A stretch of DNA of 54,786 bases, filler included, from Sluysia triapertura (GCA_046118255.1; 4 parts of 4 records of this genome joined end to end with filler, not necessarily neighbours in it), one strand, 5' to 3'. Counted from the first letter of the whole stretch, positions 1-13,391 are shown. Notes: generated from the letters alone by a model not told the origin. Made by a program: numbers and translations.

Positions 1-49
1 TAATTTGAAGATCAAGAATAAACTTGAATAATTTTGAACAATTTTGAAT

Positions 50-400
50 TCAAAAACCAATTATTTACCATTTATTTTTAATAATGCATTACAACAACCT
101 TATACGGATTCTTCTAATTCTTGTATTTTCGATTTACTTAATGACTTATATGATTGAAAGTCTGATAACACTGAAAACTCATTAATTAATTCTTTGTTTT
201 TTGATTTCAAATTCATAATTAATTCTGATACAGATGAACTTTGACACTTTCATTTCTTCCAAAAGCATTTTGAGACTTTGAAATACCGTTTTGATAATTT
301 TCCTTTATACGTAAAATATTATTCAAAATCGCATTTTTGTCAAATCCCAATAAAGTATGATCCGTAATCATAATCCTCTAAAAGGATACAAATCAAATCT
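50..400 (-). mobile_element. Decayed Mutator (MULE) transposase C-terminal fragment
   Basis: Broken minus-strand frames read YFIGI..RF..VYKGNYQNGISKSQNA..VSELIMNLK, resembling the MULE motif YIG..PxF..WNVY..GxPRTxNxxE. Multiple stops and frameshifts. Confidence 0.45.
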
Positions 401-3123
401 GTATATGTAAGATAATATTTAAACAAATATTTAAGTTTTTATTTTATAAAAAAAGCAAATTATATATAATTCAAACACTGTAATGCTTTCAGAGGTGATG
501 TTGAGACGGATTCAAAAGATGATATTCACAGAAAAAATTGTAGATATGTTTGATTATAATAGTTTAAATGTTAATGAATTTATTTGGAATTTGGTGCTTT
601 ACATGATATAAGATGAGGTTGTGAAGTATAGAAAATATTAGTAAGGGGACTGCGTGACTGTACGCAATAATAAAAGTAAAGTTAGAAAATGTTTGTCATT
701 TGTTATTTTAAAAATGAATTTAGTTTCTTATTAAATCGATTTAATAAGAATTTTCTGATTCTTTTAATGAGCGTGACTGCTTATCATATTGCAATTACGC
801 CAATATAGCTTTATATTTATTTTCACATAAATTGTTCGTTAATATTTAAATTATCTATTGGGTATTATTATTTCACTCGTACTTAATCACCATTTATTTA
901 AATTATTATTATTTTCCACTATCACTTTTATTAAATACTTATTATTAGGAATTATATTAATTGCATTGTTATTACTACCGTAAAGGGTTCATATTTACAT
1001 TCCAGCACTTCTGATTAATTTTTTCAAACTTACCTGATTATGAAATATGCTCAGATATTCGAGTGAATTCCGGCTATCTTATTACGATCATTACATTTTG
1101 TAATTTTTAAGTCAATTTATGTCAACAACTAAAACGAAGTATTTGAAAAGGCTAATAACTCCATATAAATAAATAGAATATTACTTAATTGATTCAGTAG
1201 CTGTTTTTTGAAACTAACTTCAATCATAGACAAGCATACAATATTCAATTGACAAAAAACTAAATGCTATAGCATTACAAATATTAAAATTTACTGTTAT
1301 TTTGCATTTATAATACAAATTAAAATGAATTACAAATAAAAAAAACCCAAAGAAATACACATTTCATAATTTTCTATTCTAACTAATGATGCCTTAGTTT
1401 TATCGGCGCCATTATGAAATAGGCACCAACTAAAATGGCTGCTTTATTTTTGTTAGTAGTAGTAATATTTAAACAAAAAAATTCAATCATAAAATATTTT
1501 TATTATAATTAAATTTTAATATAATAATTTTATTGATTTTACTAAAATAAAATTTTATTATATAATAAATTTTAATTATTTTTAATAAATAAAAATTATG
1601 TTACTACTTGATAATTTTATACAATTAGATTTTTCAATTTTTCTAATTTTTTCTACCTGAACAAAAAGACTATTAAATGAACGACGCTATTGTCTTTTTT
1701 TTGATTTCTTTATAATAGCTTTTTTGTGATTGCTTTTCTTCTTCTTATTCTTCTTAATCTTACTATTATTATTATTATTGTTGAAGAAAGTTTTATTGTT
1801 GATATAGGCTCATTTGACGAAAAAATTTGGCGCCTTTGTATTATTGTAATAATATTCTTATTATCAAGCTGTTTTAGGATTTAGTAATATTGATAACACT
1901 TAAAATTTATAATTAATTAAATTAATTTTGTATCTGTACAATTTTTGTTGGATTTTTCATTTTTTATTGTCGGTTTTTAGCATTGTTTTTATGATAAGTA
2001 TTAATAAAAGAATCTTAAAACATTAAAAGAATTTTAATTACTTATTCATATAATGTTTACCACAAATATAACGATGATATTTTATTTATTGATGCAGTAT
2101 TTAACTAAATAGTTAAATAAGTTTAAATAAAAATTACTCTTCTGTAAAAAATGAAATTAATGGAAACAATAAATAAATATTAAACAAATTCTTCATAATA
2201 GATCTATCATCTAGTTGCGCATCCAGGCATTGATGATATTTTAGAATTTGGTTTTTATTTTATAATTATTATTATTACAAAATCAATGATATGATAAATA
2301 ATAATGCTTTGAGATAGTTCTCTTGCAAAAGAAGAGGTCAGTTTATTATTTGGAAATATGACAATTGATATAATTAATTAACATTTAATGGTTATAGAAA
2401 ACAACTTACTTAATCTTAATGAATTCGCCTATGATCCAACGCTTACAGCAAATGGTTTTCCACAGAATTTGAGAAGATACTATCAGAAAAAAGAAATCGG
2501 TAGTCAGCCAATATTACTAACTTTCTATAAGAGTTTCAATGTCACCCTTTGCACAAGTTAATCGAAACAATATCTGCTTAAAATGTTCGTTAGTTTTTAT
2601 ATCTGTAACTTTGACGCCTTTTACATAGTGTCGTAAAATCGGAGATAAAATATTTTAATCTATTTTTTAAAAGGTGTACAAAAACATTTCTAAAATTACT
2701 GATTTAGAAGTATTTAACGATAAATAGTCTTGTGATGGTTCACTTGATTAAATTTTTATTTTTTTTCAGTTTTATGATATTAATTATTTGACTGTTTTGT
2801 TGCTAACCCTTTAAACTTCAGAATTATAAAATAATAAGTTAAAATTATCTAAACTTTAATTAAATTTTTCAACTCTCATTTTAAATAGGCTTAATATTTT
2901 AATTGCAATATAATATAAAATAGAGCAGTCAAAAATTATTAAATTAAAAAGGAGCTTCCAAAAGAAAAACAAAAATATTCAATATTGTAACCCCCAAATA
3001 TTCAAGATTAATAATTAATCTATTTTTGGACATTCTTATTTTATACTTAAAGGTTTTGTTAAAGTTTGATACTGTGAGAAATTGAGTCTTATATATTTAT
3101 TTTTTATTTTGTATTTATGCTTT

Positions 3124-3165
3124 GTGAGTCCCCTATGATTTAGTTAAGGGCTAACTTTATAATCT
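3124..3165 (+). repeat. Short (internally deleted) copy of the 56-nt structured motif
   Basis: GTGAGTCCCCTATGATTTAGTTAAGGGCTAACTTTATAA shares GTGAGTCC, TA(T/C)GA and AAGGGC-AAC with the copies at 4787 and 7064. It has an inner TTAG/CTAA stem. Confidence 0.55.
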
Positions 3166-3859
3166 TTAACTAATGATGTTAATTTATAAGTGAAAACACT
3201 TGTTATTATACGTATATTTTATACTTTTAAAAATCTATGTAATTTATTGAACTTCGAGAAAGGGATTGAAAATACTTATTCAAAATAATTGATGTGTTCT
3301 AAGATAAATTAAAGTTGTAATCTGTTTTTTAACTAAGTAATCAAAGATGTTAAAAATATTCAACTAACGAGTAGTCTATTAAATAAAATGTTGATATTCA
3401 AAAATTTGGCTTATGATTATTGATCCGTCAAGTAGTATTCCAAGAATGATTTTTCAATGTTATGTCAAAAATGTATTAGTGCTTACGTCTTGAATAACAT
3501 TTTTAAAGATGGTTCTTTGTGTCTACAAATGATTAACAATCGTCTATTTATATTATTTTGTCTTCTAAGGTCATTGACCTTAAACAGATGTTTTAAATAA
3601 ATGTATTTATGTACTTATGACTAACTTAATATAACTTTTTAATTTAATATAACTAATATAATTTAATATAACTAATTTAATTGACTTTTTAATAATAAAT
3701 TTAAAAAATAAATGTTTAAAAAGGATCTGAAATTGTAGAAATTTAAATAAAATATAATATTAATAATACAATAAAACTATTTATTTATAATTATTTGATA
3801 TTGTACATTATTACAGCGGAATATACATTAAATTATTACAATGAAATATACATGTACAT

Positions 3860-4274
3860 TACATTATTACTATGAAATATTCACAGTACTTTATGTGGAA
3901 CTAGATGCTTTCACCTTCACCACTTTGATTTTTTCTTTTCTGTGTTAACTATTAATGTATCAAATTTTCTTTAATGATTTTATTTCACAAATATTTTAAA
4001 GATTTCAAATACTCTACCAGGTTATTCAGAGATCTTAAAACAAGTCTATTAAATGTTTAAAATATCTCAAGGTTCACAACTTCAAAACGTTATCAAGCTT
4101 CCATTACAATAATATGTGGAACACTAAGGTATTGTTCAATTCTCAAAATTATTAAAGATGTTTTCATCTTCATTATTCTCACACTAACAATGTTTTGTTA
4201 TATTTTGTATTTATGTGATTTTTCTTATTTTTAAATGAAAGCCAAAATTATGTTTTGGCGAGTTCGGCTGCAGT
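3860..4274 (+). mobile_element. LTR-like repeat (same family as 49448-50048) followed by a PBS-like TGGCGAG
   Basis: CTAGATGCTTTCACCTTCACCACT (3901-3924) matches the reverse complement of ~49989-50015, and the downstream similarity continues. TGGCGAGTTCGGCTGCAG lies at 4257. Confidence 0.5.
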
Positions 4275-4786
4275 ACAAGGCTTAAAAAGTGATTGTAATT
4301 AAAAGTTGGCGATTAGTTTGTAATTTGTTTTATCTTAAATCGATGGTCCAATCTTATCTTTATCAAGGAGATGTTCTGTCTTGAGTTATTTATAAAAATT
4401 CTTCAGTAATTTACGTCAATAATTCAAAATAAACACGCATACAATTACTTTTTATTAAGTAATAATCACAAAATAGGTACAAATTCTTAGTTATTCATTA
4501 ATCACGATATGCTCTTATTAATTGTAGATTAAATACAAATTTTCAAGTATAAATCAATGTATTTGCATGATAAATTAACAAAATACAGATTCAAAATCCA
4601 GAGGTGACACAACACGCAAAATGTTAATAAAACAAATATAACAATAGCGTGAGTCACCTCATTCCACTAATAATAATAATAATAAAACATCACAAAATTT
4701 AATCAGTTTCTGAAAACAGAGCCTCAGTCACAATTGTTGAAATACTTTTATATACATAACTTTTAGTTATATTTTGTAATAAGTTT

Positions 4787-4842
4787 GTGAATCCCTTACG
4801 ATATTGGACTTACTCAATTAAGGGCAAACTCGTAAGTGTCAG
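4787..4842 (+). other. 56-nt structured motif, copy 2
   Basis: GTGAATCC-CTTACGA-TATT-GGACTTAC-TCAATTAAGGGCAAAC-TCGTAAG-TGTCAG, with stems GTGAATCC/GGACTTAC and CTTACGA/TCGTAAG. Confidence 0.65.
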
Positions 4843-6593
4843 CAGAACGTTAAATAGAAAGAAGGGAAGTCAATCATTCACAGTACGTTAATTGACTGTT
4901 AGGTGCTGTATGCAAACAATATTCAAAATTCCGCTTTTATAGAGTTTAGATCAAATATTTTATGTACGATCCTAATGTTTAAAAAGGATCTGAAATTCTA
5001 GAAATTTAAATTAATATATTCAATGTAATTGTTCTAGATTTTTTGTACTTCTGTTAAAACTATATAAGTTAGCTCACAAAGTATATTCAAAGCATATGTT
5101 TATAACTTCTCTAAATTTTATTAATATCAAAATCAAAAACTAAGTTACACTTGTTAAAGCAAATACTATATATAGTAATTTTGTAAATTATCGTACACTC
5201 GTTATAATAAATACTGTTATTAATTAAATAAAATTAATTAAAAAATTAATTAATTAAAAAACTTTATCAATTATCGCAGAGAGTTGATAAGGGATATATG
5301 TAAATTCTTTTAAAAAAATTAGTTATATAAGTAATATTACTAAACAATTACTGAAAATTAAATTGAACAATTTAAATCGTAATATTATAAACTTTAATTA
5401 AAATATTTTGACTAATAAAGTTGAAGCTAACGAATATTTACAAGATCCTGGATAGAAAAATTAATTGAACCGTGAAAATTAGTTGAAATAAAGTTTTTGT
5501 CTCATTTATTTATTGTGTTCTCATAATTATTATAATACTCTTGAATTGTGCTTAATGAGAAACTGCTATTTTTAAGGTTATGAACTTATTTAATAAATTG
5601 CTTATTTAACAAATAATTTGTAAAAAATAGATAATAATAATAATATTACTATTAGTAATTTGATAATAATAATTAATATTAACAATTTAAAAAATTATAC
5701 TAATAGATTAGAATATGACGACTATTTTATTTTATATTTTGTTGAAATTTACATTATTAAACTTAATTTATAAAATATTTATTCAATTTACATAAAATAT
5801 TTATTACATACATTATAAAAGTTTGCATAACACAATGTTTACTACAAAAGTGTTGAGGTGGCTTTACTTTAGCAAGAGAAGTTTTTTCTTTACTAGATTA
5901 TTCTGCTACTTATGTCCGAATATTTTGTAAAATGCGATTGCTTATATAATAGTTTGATAATTTGCTAAAAGATTAAAAATTAGAAAGACAAAGTAATTAC
6001 TTTGAGTTGGTTATAAGCCGACTAATTTTACTTATTACATTTCGACGATAATAGTTGAACTTAATTTGACTTCCCTTTTATTATCTCTAAGCAATTACTC
6101 AAAAATAATGACGAATAAAACCCTTATTTTATTAACAAAATTTAACACGATTAGTGTTTAATGTTTAAATAATTTATCCACTTATACTATACAAAAAAAT
6201 TTTTCCAACAGTTATTTTTTATACAATGAGTCATACATTAACCGCACGTTACACCTCGATTTCAATAACCTGTTTGATTTAGTAGCTTAGTGAGGATTAA
6301 TTTAATATAAATTTTGATTATGCTTAAACATAATGTTAGTATACTTGACCAAAAACTCAACAATTGTAGATTTTATTATGAGATTTTTAATAGCTTAACT
6401 GCGGTACTCACGAATAAAAGTTTATTCTGCTATTGTTTTTCTGACCCTGGTCTTACGAATGAAATGTGAGTTCACCAACGTACTAGGCTTGCAGTTGGAT
6501 TTTGAAATTAAAAACGTAACGTTTGTGGAGGTTATAGATTAATGCTTTTCTTCAAAAACCAAAAATTTTAACAAAAGAATTTTAATTGAACAC

Positions 6594-6720
6594 TATTTTA
6601 ATTAGGTTCTTAAACCGAAACTTTTAAATTTTAAACAATAATGATTTTAATAAGGTTCTAAAATGAACCTTAAGTTTTACTTTTAAGTGATTTTAATTAG
6701 GTTCTGAATTGAACCTTTAA
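6594..6720. repeat. Three ~50-nt-spaced units ATTTTAAT(T/A)AGGTTCT...GAAC(C)T with internal palindrome
   Basis: Direct reading. AGGTTC...GAACCT is an inverted pair in units 2 and 3. Confidence 0.7.
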
Positions 6721-6814
6721 AAATTGGTTGTTCTTCTTGGTGAAAAATCACTTTATGATGTTTATGATGAGACAAAGAACACGTCTCAGATTTACATTAT
6801 AGACAAACACAAGT

Positions 6815-6970
6815 TATGAATGTTGAACTTAGGTGTGTCGTTTGTGCAGTGGTGGTCCTAGGGTTGGCATAAGATCGAAATGGTAAGGAACTGAATAATG
6901 GTTGTTATAAATGTCAGAATGAAATTGGAAATATACATATGATTAACAAAGTTAGGAAGGGTCATTTTTG
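6815..6970 (+). pseudogene. Decayed gag-like zinc-knuckle region
   Basis: LRCVVC... *DRNGKELNNGCYKCQNEIG..GH, i.e. two degenerate CxxC knuckles. Confidence 0.35.
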
Positions 6971-7063
6971 AGAATTTCGAAAACCGTTGTTTTCTTTTTT
7001 ATTCCTTTAAAAACACAATTTAAATGTTTTGTGGGAATTTTATTTTTATTTGTGTTTCTATTC

Positions 7064-7119
7064 GTGAGTCCTCTATGATACCGGACTTACAAACTCAAGG
7101 ACCGATGCATAGATGTCAG
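7064..7119 (+). other. 56-nt structured motif, copy 3
   Basis: GTGAGTCC-TCTATGA-TACC-GGACTTAC-AAACTCAAGGACCGATG-CATAGA-TGTCAG. Same length as copy 2, with compensatory changes in stem 2. Confidence 0.65.
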
Positions 7120-9180
7120 AATTTTAAAGAAAATGAAAGTAATTGAGGTTTGTAGTTCTGCTCTAATGCTAGTTTAATTAGTTTAAATATGATCTAAAAA
7201 GATTTTTTAAATCGAATTTAAGTTTATCATAAGAAATTATCTTTGATTGTATTCTAGTTTAATTTATTAAATTATAGTTATAAAAGTTGGTTAGTTACGT
7301 AGGTATGATTTTTAATTTCTTGAATTATTAAAAATAATTAAAGATTATTAAAAATAAATTTAATTCGCCTTTTTAGAATTTCGTATTTTTTAATTTGAAC
7401 AGAGTTCTTTTGCAAGTATAATTTAATATAAAACTTTTTATATCTTGCTTTTTAAAAATAAAAAAATCAATTTATTAATTAATATTAAATATTAATATAA
7501 AATTATACAAAATAATAATAAATAATACAAAACTTTAAAATACAATTTTTACAATTATAAAGTCTGAAAACAATTATATAGTTATAATAAAAATACTCTT
7601 TTAAATATTATTATTACTTGATGATAATAATAATTTCGTGGCAAAATTTTAAATATGTTAATAAAGTTTACTTTAAAAAACGTTTAATGTATATGTTATT
7701 AAATAATTTTTTAAAAATAATTTACTTAATAATTGAATATATACTAACGTTGCAAAAAATTAATTCTTAAAAATGATAACTGTATCAATTTTTCGGTTTA
7801 ATGATAATCTTTCCAGGCACTGACGATAATTCAAATTTAAAACAATTGTAAAATAAATTCAAAAAATTTGTCTGATTTACTTAAAACGTTCTATTTATAT
7901 TTAATTTTGAATGCAGCTCATTTGATCTCAAACTAATTCGATGATTGATGTACTACGCATATTTGGAACTGACCTTTACTTTATTAATAATATTTATGAT
8001 AATTTTACTAATACAATTGTAAGGTTGTAAAGTAACATTTTTCTTTGTTTGTAGTTATTTATATTTTATTATTTATTTTATATGCATTTATTAAAAATTA
8101 TAAAAATTGAAAATATTATCTAAATTATAAAAATTTATAAATATTATTAAAATTACAAAACATTACTATTATTATTCTTTAAAAAATGCAATTAATTATA
8201 TTAGAAAATTATAAATAAAGTTTAATTATTTAAACTTATTTAAATTTAACTACCAAAAAAGAATCTTCTAGAACAAATTGTTTTAACAGATTAAATTTAT
8301 TAATATGATTCTTTATAGTCATAATACTACATATAGATACAAAATTAGAATCGTCATACTGATTAATTTTAATTTTGATATCAAACAAATTAATCACAAA
8401 GTAGAATCAATGAACAATATAATCACACAAACTGATTCAGTCATTATTATGCATCACAGAAGTTGATTTCTGGTACATATTTAATATGCAAGTCCATTTC
8501 ATCGTTAACAAATTTGGCACAAATTATTTACACTAACGTTCAAGGAAGACGATCCTGAAATTCATTATATTATCATAAAAGACAAGTAGTAAGTTTAATT
8601 TCTATAGCTTTGCATACTCTATAGAAATATAGAGTTAAAATATTTATTTAAAATACTTGATTTTCAGTTGGTCATTAAGGCCAATTATAAAATAAAATTA
8701 AGTTGATCGAAACTTGGGGTTAGGTCATTTGCTTGAGATAAAATTATTATTATTTATTAAATTGATTGATACTTGTATCATTTGTGAAGTTTTAATCTAT
8801 TTAGTTTTATATTTTAGTTTTTGTAAATTTAGCTTTTTCAATAACGATTGTTATTTTTTGATATAATATTAACATTTGCATTATTGGAATTTATATCTAA
8901 CGATGTTTTTACTGTTTTTAAGATAAATAAATAATATAAAGTTAACTGTAACATTATTCTATTAATATATAATTAATTAATTACTTTCCTGGATATGGTA
9001 ATCAACATAAAGTTTCTACTTAAACTTAGATATAAACACAAACGTTGGGCATGTTATTATTGCCTCTTAACACATAAGTTACTTACGATATCTGTCTAAT
9101 AACGTTTCCTATGATTTGTCCTTTATATTTCACTTTGAAGCAAAAAAAAGTATTTTTATATCGTTATTCTTTAGGCATAC

Positions 9181-9297
9181 CTTTACGTTATTTACAGATA
9201 CGCCATTAGTAAGTCGTATACTGTAAGCGGACTCGAAATAATAATTTATTTTGCTGTTAGATAAGTTTTAGAGTTTAAAAGAAAAACAACCCAGCAC
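9181..9297 (+). repeat. Left arm of a long inverted repeat (partner 13186-13300)
   Basis: TACAGATACGCCATTAGTAAGTCGTATACTGTAAGCGGACTC is near-identical to the reverse complement of 13245-13287. Similarity extends to ...GAAAAACAACCCAG. Confidence 0.85.
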
Positions 9298-9479
9298 AAT
9301 AATAGTCATAATAATGTAATTTATAATATTTAATATATAATTTAATAATAATATAATAATAATAATAATTAATTTTAATTTTTTCAACTATTTTACATTA
9401 AATTGCAGAATTAAATTATGAAATTACTATACAAAATTAAAATATTACATAAACATATTGACAGTTTCAGAAATTCATC

Positions 9480-9760
9480 ATTTAGGTAGTAAGTCTGAAC
9501 TAATTTCATTTAGATAGATTTACTAATTTATTTATAAAGATTACACTAATTATCCAGGCACTAATTATTGTTCAAAATTGTAATCCTTTCTTCGGTATTT
9601 AAATTGTAAAATTCACGATGTTCTGATTTGAAAACCTGGTTATTACAATGTGAAGATGCCACCACTGTTCAAACTAGCAGAGGTATTAAATGTCTATTGT
9701 GAATGGATAACTTAATGTTTTGTCCTAGAGTAATTACATAATAGATTGTCAATACTACGT
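9480..9760 (-). mobile_element. Decayed MULE transposase C-terminal fragment (related relics near 2221 and 7812)
   Basis: RTKH.V..FN....GIFTL..FKSE resembles RTNNxVE.HxxFN..HPxIFxLIxxLKxE. The CCAGGCA(C/T)T core recurs at ~2223, ~7813 and ~9554. Confidence 0.45.
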
Positions 9761-10193
9761 AAAATATTGTAAATATTAGTAATGGTATCTCATACATTTC
9801 AATAATTTCGTTTAAAGATGTCAATAAGAGCATTGTTTATGCTAGAGGTATTCACTAATAAATAAATTAGTTGACGTGGTTTTACTAGAACCTACTTCCT
9901 ATTTTAAGTTATGCTATTTGGCATTTTTAACCTGTGTATCTTTGTATGATTCTTGAAAATATCATATTCATAAACCAAACACTTCTGTAAATTCTCGAGC
10001 ATTATCGCAGCATATTCCGGAATTTCTAAGTATTGTGAAGTCAGTGGAATCAAGGAGTATTTTTTGTTCCTGCTATACATTAAGTATAAGGATGAACTGA
10101 GCTTCTTTAAGCAAACAAGTAAGGTGAAATAAAAAACACCGATTCAGTTTGTTTATCATTTAGATTTCAGCATGTTAGTTAGAGTCCTACTAA

Positions 10194-10326
10194 CACTAAG
10201 CGTACCATGACGGGTCAAATGACCTTTTTTAGTTTTTACTTTAAAAAATGCTTTGAAATTGTATTACCATTTTATAATATGACTTAATTTTAAATAAAGG
10301 TACATCAAACATTGGTACGTTTAGTG
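10194..10326. mobile_element. piggyBac-type MITE
   Basis: TIRs CACTAAGCGTACCA / TGGTACGTTTAGTG (13/14 match), flanked by CTAA and TTAA. Subterminal GGTCAAATGACC. Confidence 0.75.
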
Positions 10327-11128
10327 TTAAATCTCTCGACAAGACCATCAATTTGTGGATGATAAATTAATAATTTTAAAAACTGATTTTGCCTCTCATT
10401 AAATTTGGGTTAACAATTATTATTAAGAGATTTTTAGTTTAATGTTTTAATTTCGAAAGTTAAATAAAAATAACTTACTAAATAATTTACTGACATCCAA
10501 ATAAACGTTAGATTATTCACACAGAATAACTGTAACATATAGTTTTAGGGGGAAATCACATAAAATTCACCACACTTCACATAAAAACATCACTTACTTA
10601 CACAGATTATTAAACAAACTACTTGACTCATTCAAAACACAAACATAATCATTGTACATAATTATCACTAACTATAACTATTGCTATTACAGATCCAATC
10701 GTATTAAAATATATAATAATTATTAGTATTATTATCGTATAATATAATTGCCACGATTGTCACATAATAACTTTCATATTAACATCAACAAATACCATTA
10801 TTTTTAAACATATAATAATCACGTTATTGTTACCATTATCATTTCTTTTTGTTCTTTTGTTTTTCCCAGTTTATATATATTTATCTTTGTGTTAATCAAT
10901 AAATTATTTGTATATATGCTTGAAACTAATTATCATTCGTCCAAGACTGCACAGAATTTGGAAGTTCTAAAAGAAAACATTGATGACTTCGAAAATCAAA
11001 TTAAATAAATGTTGTTTACATTTGGAATGATGTCCAAAGATGGCACTCAAGTTGATCGCAAAAATGATTTGAAATCTAAAGTCTATAAATTGCAAAAGGA
11101 ATATTGTTAAGAAATAAATTTAACATCT

Positions 11129-12255
11129 TTATAGTGTTCGCTAAAGCCAAAAAATGCGTAAAACATTTTAGCAATTGAAAAATATATCAAATATTTATCT
11201 TCGTGGTCTACAGATGCACATATTGGTCGTCATTGGTCGTTTTTTTTACTCGAACTAGCCACGACATGCCAAACTGGACCTAATTGTTCATCTAAAAGTT
11301 CTTTAAATTCACGCTCTGCGTGTCAATTTTACAGGCTCGGATTTATGTTTAATTTCTTCATACCTTTCAATAATATCACGACATGTTTCGATAAGGTGCA
11401 CTATTACTCATGCACGCTGTGTAAACTTGAATATCACGGAATTCCAAATAGTTGTTACTGAAATAGTCTGCCAATCTAGGTCGACTTGATCTATGTAATC
11501 TAAAAGAATATTTTCCTTCAATATGATTTGTCAGATGTTTATGAATTAGTAAAAATATATAATGATTAATTAAGTAATGTTTAGTTTACATTATGTATTC
11601 AAAATATACTGTGTTTTCGTCTCCTATTGCCTAATTATGAACAAAAAGTACGATATACAATATAATATATGATAAAATTCAATATAGTTTCTAAGCTATT
11701 CAATTGTAGCTTTGTAGAAGATTAATTAATTATGTAGAACTGAAATAGTCAAGATCGTAGTAGTTGAGACCAGATTATAGATATTTTAATTCTTTTCGTC
11801 AAATTTCATATGGAACATGGACTAAAGATGAATAGAGTATTTTGAGTTAATTAAAAATAGTTTATTTGTAATTTGTAGTACATATCTAGGTATATCTTAA
11901 ACAGGTTCATTTTACAAATCCTAAATAATTAAAAAACAAAATATTTTACTAAATATTTAGTAACATAAGTTAAAAACTTTCATTTTATCTTTATTCGTAC
12001 CTCGAATATCTAATGCTATAGAGTACTCTTCCAGTGCTATAATACCATCACCGTTTATATATAAAACAAATGGAAAAAGTTCTTAATTGTACAATTTTAT
12101 TAATTAAATCTAAACAATCTAACCTCCATAAAATGTCCATTACATTGTTCTCGAATTATAAACTTCCTTACTTCATCCTTTGATATTATTATTCCTCGAC
12201 CATCAATATCAATATCGTTAAATGCAGTATTAACAATAGTAACATTAGTAACAAA
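11129..12255 (-). pseudogene. EF-hand + dynein light chain (tegumental allergen-like, TAL) pseudogene, at least 3 exons
   Basis: Exon A: AFNDIDIDGRGIIISKDEVRKFI...FME. 42-nt intron 12082-12123. Exon B: NFFHLF(Y)I/NGDGIIALEEYSIALDIR. 501-nt intron 11500-12000. Exon C: DIQVYTACMS..FKELLDEQLGPVWHVVA..ASVDHEDKYLIYFSI..L*RTL* (degenerate WRTP). Splice phases are compatible. Several frameshifts and stops. Confidence 0.8.
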
Positions 12256-12915
12256 TCAACTTGTAGTCGTACTGTTAATGAAATTAATAATTGTATTTGA
12301 TTTGATTGTAATTTTACGAACTAAGAAAAACATTTATTTTGATGGAGTTAAGTAAATAAAAATATTTTTTATTACAGAGTAATTTAAATTATACTTATTT
12401 ATACTCGTTAACATACCATGAATAATCTATATAAATTATTATCAGGTAATATATGTTTGAATTCGAGTTCAAAATCATATTTATCAATTATCAGCCCGCT
12501 AATGTGTCGTAGAATGTGTTTAAAATGTTTGTTGGAATTGTAATAGCTACCAAATAACAAATATGAATTTTGATTGATAAATAAACTAAGTAAAACTTAT
12601 GTTACTACTTATTGTGCTGACTGAATGCGGCAAAAGTTGATATACGAATTGAAAAGTATTTCTAGTCCTTATTCATGCGATTTAATAAAGACATATCGTA
12701 ATAGAACCTAATTTAACATCTAAATCAATTCCTATGAAACCTGAATTAGAAACTGAAACTTGAATTTTTATTTTATTATTTTCTAGCTAATAATTTCTAA
12801 TAATATCTTTTATTGTATTATATTATTTCATAAATATATACATGTTATGGTTAATAAAAAAATTAATACGTTAACTACAGTGAAAACTTGTATAACCAAA
12901 ATGTTAAATCACGTA

Positions 12916-13100
12916 ATGCTAATATCGTTATTTATTGCTTTATGTATACAATGTAATATGACTGCCGAATGCTTCATGTGTAAAAATTGCAATGAACTAC
13001 CTAAATCGGATAATGTCACTACCGTCTGTTGAATCTGGCATTGACAGAATTTGTTCTCATGTAAAATGTTCTCACATTTCATCACTTGGAGAGTATTCTA
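12916..13100 (+). pseudogene. Possible small secreted Cys-rich (Ly6/three-finger-like) gene remnant
   Basis: MLISLFIALCIQCNMTA-ECFMCKNC...C then RICSHVKC: a hydrophobic leader followed by xCFxCxxC. Confidence 0.25.
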
Positions 13101-13185
13101 CTGTCCGATGTTCAAAAATTTTAGAAAATATGAAATTTTTAACTGTGACTATAGTGATGTGAGTGCTTTTATATTTTTTTTCGTT

Positions 13186-13300
13186 ATTCTGGGTGTTTTT
13201 CTTAACTTAAAAACTTAACTTACAGCAAAATAATTAATTATTATGAGTCCGTTTACAGTATACGACTTACTAATGGCGGACCTGTAAAAATTACGTGAAA
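13186..13300 (-). repeat. Right arm of the long inverted repeat (partner 9181-9297)
   Basis: See partner. Confidence 0.85.
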
Positions 13301-13391
13301 GCAATTATCAAAAGTAACTCTTTAAAAGATGCTTCGTCTCAATTTAACGATAATAAGCAAAATCGTTATTTTACAACAAATAACTTAAAAA

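What the first reader, a model, noticed from the sequence alone, without database searches (positions are those of the whole stretch)
4787..7119. Repeated 56-nt pseudoknot-like motif with compensatory substitutions, bounded by splice-site-like ends
Seen: the copies at 4787-4842 and 7064-7119 are both exactly 56 nt but diverged. Stem CTTACG/CGTAAG in one is TCTATG/CATAGA in the other, i.e. three compensatory pairs. A weaker inner stem also varies (TTGG/CAAA, CCGG/CCGA, and TTAG/CTAA in the short copy at 3124). GTGA(G/A)TCC can pair with the invariant GGACTTAC, giving an H-type pseudoknot. Both full copies start GTGART, end TGTCAG, and have a CTAAC/CAAAC-like word upstream. ACTTAC equals the U1 snRNA 5'-end sequence that reads 5' splice sites (established). 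Inference: a selected RNA structure carried by a mobile element. Copy 2 lies after an LTR+PBS and before a purine run; copy 3 lies after a gag-like knuckle. Candidates are a new self-cleaving ribozyme, a self-masking intron/introner, or a packaging or recoding signal. I could not fit it to canonical hammerhead, HDV, twister or pistol cores.
Basis: partly seen in the sequence, partly recalled or inferred. Interest (0 to 1): 0.8.

Follow-up and report, generated by a model that had tools for sequence, protein, structure and literature searches.

The report
Short dispersed repeat with conserved hairpin
The "56-nt motif" is the core of a short repeat scattered at least five times, in both orientations, through this AT-rich, gene-poor window; its 12-bp stem keeps pairing while its letters change, which is what mobile repeats with a recognition hairpin look like, and nothing supports an intron, a pseudoknot ribozyme or an LTR/gag setting.

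Summary
The two 56-nt copies are real: 38/56 bases are identical, and they are the best composition-weighted 56-mer pair in the window. The three compensatory pairs are also real. The arms of the window's strongest inverted repeat (13243-13295 +, 9186-9236 -) carry the same core with yet another compensated stem, and two weak candidates exist. Across four copies a 12-bp hairpin is 85% paired, and 7 of 12 pairs change on both sides. Stem letters differ by 42-58%, but the loop (GACTTAC...) and the 5' word GAGTCC differ by only 20-30%. The proposed second helix (GTGAGTCC/GGACTTAC) never covaries; every change breaks a pair, and it competes with the inner stem. The GT...CAG ends occur only in one subfamily. 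No Rfam family, protein domain, LTR pair or reverse-transcriptase/gag remnant was found. Best reading: the conserved stem-loop of a SINE-like or truncated-LINE-like interspersed repeat, probably a cis-recognition hairpin. The source genome could not be reached, so element class and function remain inferred. Interest is modest.

The parts
4787..4842 (+). Hairpin arms 4795-4807 and 4825-4836; loop 4808-4824 with GACTTAC; 5' word GAATCC.
   Evidence: R1 71.9 bits
7064..7119 (+). Hairpin arms 7072-7084 and 7102-7113; loop with GACTTAC; 5' word GAGTCC.
   Evidence: R1 69.0 bits
3124..3182 (+). Copy c1, degenerate. The head is 15/16 identical to c3. The apical part with GACTTAC is missing, the basal stem is not kept, and the flanks are homologous to c2/c3.
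13243..13295 (+). Copy c4 of the core (second subfamily), inside the right arm of the inverted repeat. Stem TTTACAG/CTGTAAA.
9186..9236 (-). Copy c5 of the core (second subfamily), inside the left arm of the inverted repeat. Stem of 10 bp plus one bulge.
9458..9507 (-). Possible degenerate copy c7. It has an exact GACTTAC, a shorter compensated stem (TTCAG/CTGAA) and a TGTCA end. It lacks GAGTCC.
   Evidence: (8.3 bits, E 1.6)
938..990 (-). Possible very degenerate copy c6 (the head resembles c2, the rest has decayed).
   Evidence: 9.5 bits, E 0.73
4757..4875 (+). Approximate extent of the subfamily-1 unit around c2: T-rich stretch, core, purine-rich stretch.
7034..7150 (+). Approximate extent of the subfamily-1 unit around c3.
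13189..13334 (+). Subfamily-2 unit around c4 (right arm of the inverted repeat).
   Evidence: I1; 132 nt, 77%
9148..9294 (-). Subfamily-2 unit around c5 (left arm of the inverted repeat). An (AAT)n-rich stretch follows at 9300-9380.

Best explanation
The motif is the conserved core (about 55-70 nt) of a family of short interspersed repeats. The family has no detectable coding capacity in this window.

- a conserved single-stranded word, GAGTCC;
- a 12-bp stem (7 bp, one bulged T, then 5 bp) whose letters are free but whose pairing is kept;
- a 12-17-nt loop with conserved sequence (GACTTAC ... TAA-G/T-GG);
- a short conserved tail word (ACGT-N-AAAG).

Two subfamilies share this core but have different flanks.

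Shown: the core is repeated, dispersed and found in both orientations; the stem covaries; the loop is conserved.

Inferred: the hairpin is the cis element by which the repeat is recognised by the enzyme that copies it. This most likely happens in RNA form, as in the about-60-nt stem-loop tail shared by stringent-type LINEs and their partner SINEs. Copies in the window would then be old insertions decaying at different rates (c1, c6 and c7 the most decayed).
For: Real repeat:
- c2/c3 are the best 56-mer pair in the window.
- The bipartite signature GTAAGTC-N10-15-GGAYTC is found 4 times against 0.00 expected.
- GACTTAC is found 5 times against 0.86 expected, always inside a copy.

Covarying stem:
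- 85.4% of cells are paired and 7 of 12 pairs change on both sides.
- 0 of 500 shuffles reach the covariation score.
- With the 3' partner slid, only 21-38% of cells pair.
- RNAalifold finds the same hairpin on its own, on both strands.
- Stem columns differ by 42-58% between subfamilies. Loop and flank columns differ by only 20-30%.
- Random substitutions of the observed number and type keep at least 10 of 12 pairs with P of about 1e-3 to 1e-5.

Strand hint:
- In the reverse orientation, c1-c3 are followed at once by 57-73% A, against a 37% background.

Precedent:
- An about-60-bp conserved stem-loop tail is shared by a LINE and its SINEs. The stem is recognised generally and the loop specifically (PMC1636434; PMC4176376).
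Against: - There are only four informative copies, from three lineages.
- Most double changes are transitions, the commonest mutation type.
- No reverse-transcriptase, endonuclease or other domain was found beside any copy.
- I recognised no target-site duplications in the printed flanks; no formal search was run.
- No tRNA-like head was found.
- In subfamily 2 about 60 nt of conserved sequence lie between the hairpin and the end of the unit, in either orientation. The hairpin is therefore not strictly terminal.
- The thermodynamic signal is modest: z is -0.6 to -3.1.
- The source genome could not be searched, so copy number and ends are unknown.
Confidence: 0.45

Rival explanations
1. DNA-level element. 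The core is a subterminal hairpin or palindromic binding motif of a DNA transposon. c5 and c4 would be the inverted ends of a decayed element of about 4.2 kb (9148-13334). c7 would be an inner subterminal copy, and c1-c3 would be solo ends or tiny derivatives.
For: c5 and c4 lie in a 132-nt inverted repeat of 77% identity, 3.9 kb apart. c7 lies 220 nt inward of c5 in the same orientation. The GC-richest stretch of the window (11160-11590), with overlapping ORFs, lies between them.
Against: No transposase or any other domain or homologue was found for the inner ORFs. Spliced EF-hand-like exons lie inside. I recognised no target duplication and no terminal inverted repeat in the printed unit ends; no dedicated search was run. 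c1-c3 are solo and all face one way. The one-sided mismatch types (A.C but no G.T) are not expected for a double-stranded site.
Confidence: 0.2
2. A neutral palindrome. The repeat is mobile or duplicated, but the hairpin has no function. Complementarity would be created and restored by intra-strand template switching during replication, which rewrites one arm from the other in a single event.
For: Template switching is reported to create and maintain hairpins and to mimic compensatory substitutions (PMC8794818). Clustered multi-base differences lie in both arms. The folding-energy z-scores are weak.
Against: It does not explain why the loop and the GAGTCC word are far more conserved than the stem. 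It also does not explain why three lineages each keep 10-11 of 12 pairs, or the G.U-type asymmetry.
Confidence: 0.15
3. A host-used RNA element. One version is a hairpin that displays a 5'-splice-site-like word (GUAAGU on the reverse strand) or a U1-5'-end-like word (ACUUAC on the reader's strand) in its loop, acting on splicing or on the spliceosomal snRNP U1. Another version is a small-RNA gene family.
For: The hexamer sits in the conserved loop of four to five copies.
Against: No Rfam family matches. A 12-bp stem is too short for a microRNA precursor. The copies lie in both orientations in gene-poor DNA and decay (c1 lost the loop). No expression data are available.
Confidence: 0.08
4. One reading: a 56-nt self-masking intron or introner, or a new pseudoknotted self-cleaving ribozyme.
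For: c2 and c3 begin GTGART and end CAG, and are 56 nt long. GTGAGTCC/GGACTTAC can form 7-8 pairs.
Against: The GT is absent in c4/c5, and CAG is absent in c1, c4 and c5. Homology continues about 25-30 nt past both 'junctions'. The flanks have stops in all frames and no shared frame. The helix has no covariation and 6 broken cells, and it competes with the covarying inner stem. No ribozyme family is matched.
Confidence: 0.04

Closest known systems
Conserved 3'-tail stem-loop shared by stringent-type LINEs and their partner SINEs (eel UnaL2/UnaSINE1-2, zebrafish ZfL2; PMC1636434, PMC4176376)
   Same: A block of about 60 nt is shared by repeats that otherwise differ. The stem is kept by pairing with a bulge or hinge. 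Loop sequence matters. An A-rich stretch lies next to the block in one orientation.
   Different: No partner element with a reverse transcriptase was seen. The block is not shown to be terminal. No short terminal tandem repeat is present. The loop is much larger (12-17 nt), and an extra conserved single-stranded word (GAGTCC) is present.
Conserved central domains of SINE superfamilies (PMC4758252, abstract seen)
   Same: A central block is shared by families with unrelated flanks.
   Different: No tRNA-, 5S- or 7SL-like head was found. The units are only about 120-150 nt. No sequence comparison with named domains was possible with the tools.
Hairpins kept by template switching (PMC8794818)
   Same: Multi-base, both-arm differences preserve complementarity.
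   Different: Here the loop is more conserved than the stem, and three lineages keep the pairing.
Introner-like elements and mirtrons (from general knowledge)
   Same: Length of about 56 nt, GT...AG in two copies, hairpin potential.
   Different: The ends are not conserved in the family, there are no exons, homology crosses the ends, and the stem is too short for a microRNA precursor.

Membership tests
LINE/SINE shared 3'-tail stem-loop | Conserved block of about 60 nt shared by otherwise different interspersed repeats | tested here: met
   Two subfamilies share the core but not the flanks.
LINE/SINE shared 3'-tail stem-loop | Stem maintained by compensatory change | tested here: met
   7 of 12 pairs change on both sides and 85% of cells are paired.
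LINE/SINE shared 3'-tail stem-loop | Block lies at the 3' end, followed by a tail (short repeats or A-rich) and a target duplication | tested here: inconclusive
   In the reverse orientation an A-rich stretch follows c1-c3. Subfamily 2 has about 60 nt more before its end. I recognised no target duplication in the printed flanks; no formal search was run.
LINE/SINE shared 3'-tail stem-loop | An autonomous partner with reverse transcriptase carries the same tail | tested here: not met
   No domain was found in any ORF piece beside the copies. Only this window could be searched.
Spliceosomal intron / introner | GT...AG ends conserved in all members, with exons on both sides | tested here: not met
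   The ends are present only in c2/c3. The flanks are non-coding and homologous across the 'junctions'.
Known self-cleaving ribozymes and other Rfam families | Match to a curated covariance model | tested here: not met
   There are 0 hits at E<=1 on the whole window. Only chance-level hits (E>0.6, far below the gathering scores) appear on 200-460-nt pieces.
   Covariation is zero, and 4 of 8 pairs vary only by breaking. The helix shares its GG with the covarying inner stem.
LTR retrotransposon context | Paired long terminal repeats, and gag/pol remnants | tested here: not met
   The longest direct repeats are low-complexity stretches of 49 nt or less. There are no Pfam hits.
MITE / TIR DNA transposon | Terminal inverted repeats of the unit plus a fixed target duplication | tested here: inconclusive
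   I saw no TIR in the printed ends of the 120-150-nt units, but ran no dedicated search. The c5/c4 pair could itself be the ends of a larger element.
microRNA precursor / mirtron | Continuous stem of about 30 bp or more with a strongly negative z-score | tested here: not met
   The stem is 12 bp. With flanks z is -0.5 to -0.9.

The most novel reading that the evidence does not exclude
The conserved loop word (ACUUAC on one strand, GUAAGU on the other), the invariant GAGUCC next to the stem and the covarying hairpin could together form a new small functional RNA carried by a retroposon. Examples would be a decoy for, or mimic of, the spliceosomal snRNP U1, or a new self-cleaving fold that uses the 5-bp invariant part of the second helix.
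Probability: 0.05. Interest if true: 0.75.

Novelty: new member of a known kind. Interest (0 to 1): 0.3.

Why it matters
If confirmed in the source genome, this would be a compact, well-defined recognition hairpin: a covarying stem plus a conserved loop. It would be useful for annotating a probably very abundant repeat (5-7 copies in 13 kb) in an unusually AT-rich, poorly annotated genome, and for pairing non-autonomous repeats with their autonomous partner. It does not open a new class of RNA, and the intron, ribozyme and pseudoknot readings that made it look exciting do not hold.

Tried and rejected
Source genome and more copies:
- Four exact-product look-ups of window ORFs found nothing.
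- One exhaustive protein search with an exon gave only two long, many-stretch (repetitive) proteins of 26-29% identity, not usable as relatives.
- Two word-based protein searches found nothing.
- Six DNA pattern scans of the metagenome, prokaryote-genome and viral collections, using two family patterns, gave 0 hits. The window's own contig is therefore not in any scannable DNA collection.

Genome-type ideas rejected:
- A ciliate or other genetic code: ORF lengths fit chance.
- A RIP-mutated fungal repeat: the indices do not fit, and CpG observed/expected is 1.04.

Other element types considered from the sequence and rejected:
- microRNA or mirtron: the stem is too short.
- C/D snoRNA, spliced-leader RNA, recursive splice site and Helitron end: their expected features were not seen, or were not conserved among the copies.
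- A signal-peptide first exon: there is no shared reading frame.

Unverified or unproductive:
- A piggyBac-like remnant at 11.2-11.6 kb was a guess from residue patterns and could not be verified.
- A literature string search was useless.

Slips I must declare:
- I also briefly imagined an ancestral state of the 6-bp stem to gauge mutation bias.

Steps left out or tool output not used:
- The joined-exon model of the EF-hand-like gene was not built. Its exons were searched one by one.
- The consensus lines printed by the alignment and covariance-model tools were not used.

Full report
**Setting**

The piece (1-13391) is 23% G+C and has no ORF above about 100 codons in the standard code. ARAGORN finds no tRNA and Rfam finds nothing at E<=1. 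CpG is not depleted (observed/expected 1.04), and the RIP indices are not those of a RIP-mutated fungal repeat. Alternative genetic codes do not open long frames beyond chance.

The only gene-like feature is a set of three EF-hand-like exons with plausible splice sites on the minus strand, at about 11998-12548. One exon matches small calcium-binding proteins of Entamoeba in the PDB at E 4e-4. This is a generic EF-hand likeness and only a weak hint about taxon. The exons were searched one by one, and the joined model was not built. The window is therefore repeat-rich, gene-poor eukaryotic DNA of unknown origin.

**The observation**

- The two full copies are real. They share 38/56 identities without gaps and form the best composition-weighted 56-mer pair in the window (62.0, against 43.6 or less for unrelated pairs).
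- The head of the 3124 copy is 15/16 identical to copy 3. This copy has lost the apical part of the hairpin and does not keep the basal stem.
- Homology between copies 2 and 3 runs about 25-30 nt beyond both ends of the 56-nt stretch: a T-rich stretch upstream and a purine-rich stretch downstream. The 56-nt bounds are therefore not the bounds of the repeated unit.

**More copies**

A profile of the three copies weakly picked up both arms of the strongest inverted repeat of the window. Alignment shows the same core there: c4 at 13243-13295 (+) and c5 at 9186-9236 (-).

- The bipartite signature GTAAGTC-N10-15-GGAYTC occurs four times (c2-c5) against 0.00 expected.
- GACTTAC occurs five times against 0.86 expected. 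Every occurrence lies in a copy, including a further degenerate one, c7.
- c4 and c5 share about 145 nt with each other (77% over 132 nt), but share only the core with c1-c3.

The family is thus dispersed, occurs in both orientations and has at least two subfamilies. This is the pattern of an interspersed mobile repeat, not of a gene-specific signal.

**Structure**

On the four informative copies (alignment A6) I named one hairpin of 7 bp, a bulged T and 5 bp.

- 85.4% of the 48 cells are standard pairs.
- 7 of 12 pairs change on both sides.
- No shuffle of 500 reaches the covariation score.
- Sliding the 3' partner by 1-3 columns drops pairing to 21-38%.
- RNAalifold, unprompted, predicts the same hairpin on either strand.
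- Stem columns differ by 42-58% between subfamilies. Loop and flank columns differ by only 20-30%.
- If the observed number and type of substitutions are placed at random in the stem, at least 10 of 12 pairs survive with P of about 1e-3 to 1e-5 per comparison.

Caveats: only three lineages are involved, most double changes are transitions, and the structure was chosen after seeing the data. Folding energies alone are unremarkable (z from -0.6 to -3.1).

**The second helix**

GTGARTCC can pair with GGACTTAC, but nothing supports this as a conserved helix.

- Across the four copies there is no covariation at all.
- The four pairs that vary do so only by breaking, giving six broken cells.
- The GG of GGACTTAC is also used by the covarying inner stem.
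- With no linker between the two 5' strands, the H-type knot would be strained. This last point is my inference.
- The invariant 5-bp middle of the helix says nothing either way.

**Ends and context**

- 'GTGART' is present only in c1-c3, and 'TGTCAG' only in c2-c3. c4 and c5 have other letters there.
- The flanks have stops in all frames and no shared frame.
- There is no long direct repeat that could be an LTR pair.
- Thirty ORF pieces gave no Pfam family at useful significance. These include every piece beside the copies and the short Cys/His stretch upstream of c3.
- Small-window Rfam searches gave only chance-level hits.

The intron/introner, known-ribozyme, LTR+PBS and gag readings are not supported.

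**Which strand?**

- On the reverse strand the four A.C cells become G.U, raising pairing to 45/48.
- The consensus energy is better on the reverse strand: -11.95 against -8.8.
- In that orientation c1-c3 are followed at once by a stretch of 57-73% A.

Four to nil is only p of about 0.06, so this is a hint and not a result.

**Explanation**

A covarying stem capped by a conserved loop and flanked by a conserved word, shared by repeat subfamilies with different flanks, is what a cis-recognition hairpin of a mobile element looks like. The best-documented parallel is the about-60-nt stem-loop tail shared by stringent-type LINEs and their SINEs. There the stem is read generally and the loop specifically (PMC1636434; PMC4176376). 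A shared central domain of SINE superfamilies is a second parallel (PMC4758252).

I commit to this reading at 0.45. The 'interspersed repeat with a maintained hairpin' part is much firmer than the 'RNA-level recognition by a reverse transcriptase' part.

Rivals are:
- a DNA-transposon end motif, since the c5/c4 pair could bound a 4.2-kb element;
- a neutral palindrome kept by template switching (PMC8794818);
- a host-used RNA;

**Limits**

No public DNA collection that I could scan holds this contig or the family. All protein routes to the source genome failed. Copy number, exact ends, target duplications and an autonomous partner could therefore not be examined.

This was against the rule. 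None of it was used in a call or as evidence, and none is written here.

Noticed in passing
window 9148-9294 and 13189-13334: This is the strongest repeat in the window: an inverted pair (132 nt, 77% identity) 3.9 kb apart. It encloses the EF-hand-like exons and the GC-richest stretch. Each arm carries a copy of the core.
   Followed up: partly
window 11998-12548, minus strand: Three EF-hand-like exons with GT..AG borders. One putative intron is about 42 nt by my reading, but the reading frame did not close across that junction, so the splice model is unresolved. The best solved-structure matches are Entamoeba calcium-binding proteins (E 4e-4), a generic likeness. No homologue was found for the first exon among 1.8 billion representatives.
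   Followed up: partly
window 6578-6717: Three tandem units of 46-49 nt. Most carry a palindrome of the type AGGTTC-N6-GAACCT. They lie about 350 nt upstream of c3.
   Followed up: no
window 3711-3751 and 4974-5014: A 41-nt block that is 95% identical in two places, with nothing similar around it. It lies 530 nt after c1 and 130 nt after c2.
   Followed up: partly
window 2222-2248, 7812-7838, 9553-9579: A third short repeat (27 nt, 78% identity). Each copy starts with the same G+C-rich word TCCAGGCA. All three are on the plus strand.
   Followed up: no
window 11160-11590: The GC-richest stretch (33-37%), with overlapping ORFs of 60-99 codons on both strands. There is no Pfam family and no homologue. 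It may be a decayed gene of a mobile element.
   Followed up: partly
window 725-750 and 11942-11967: A perfect 26-nt palindrome centred on ATCGAT, and a second one that is 92% perfect.
   Followed up: no
window 9300-9380: An (AAT)n-like microsatellite directly beside the c5 unit.
   Followed up: no
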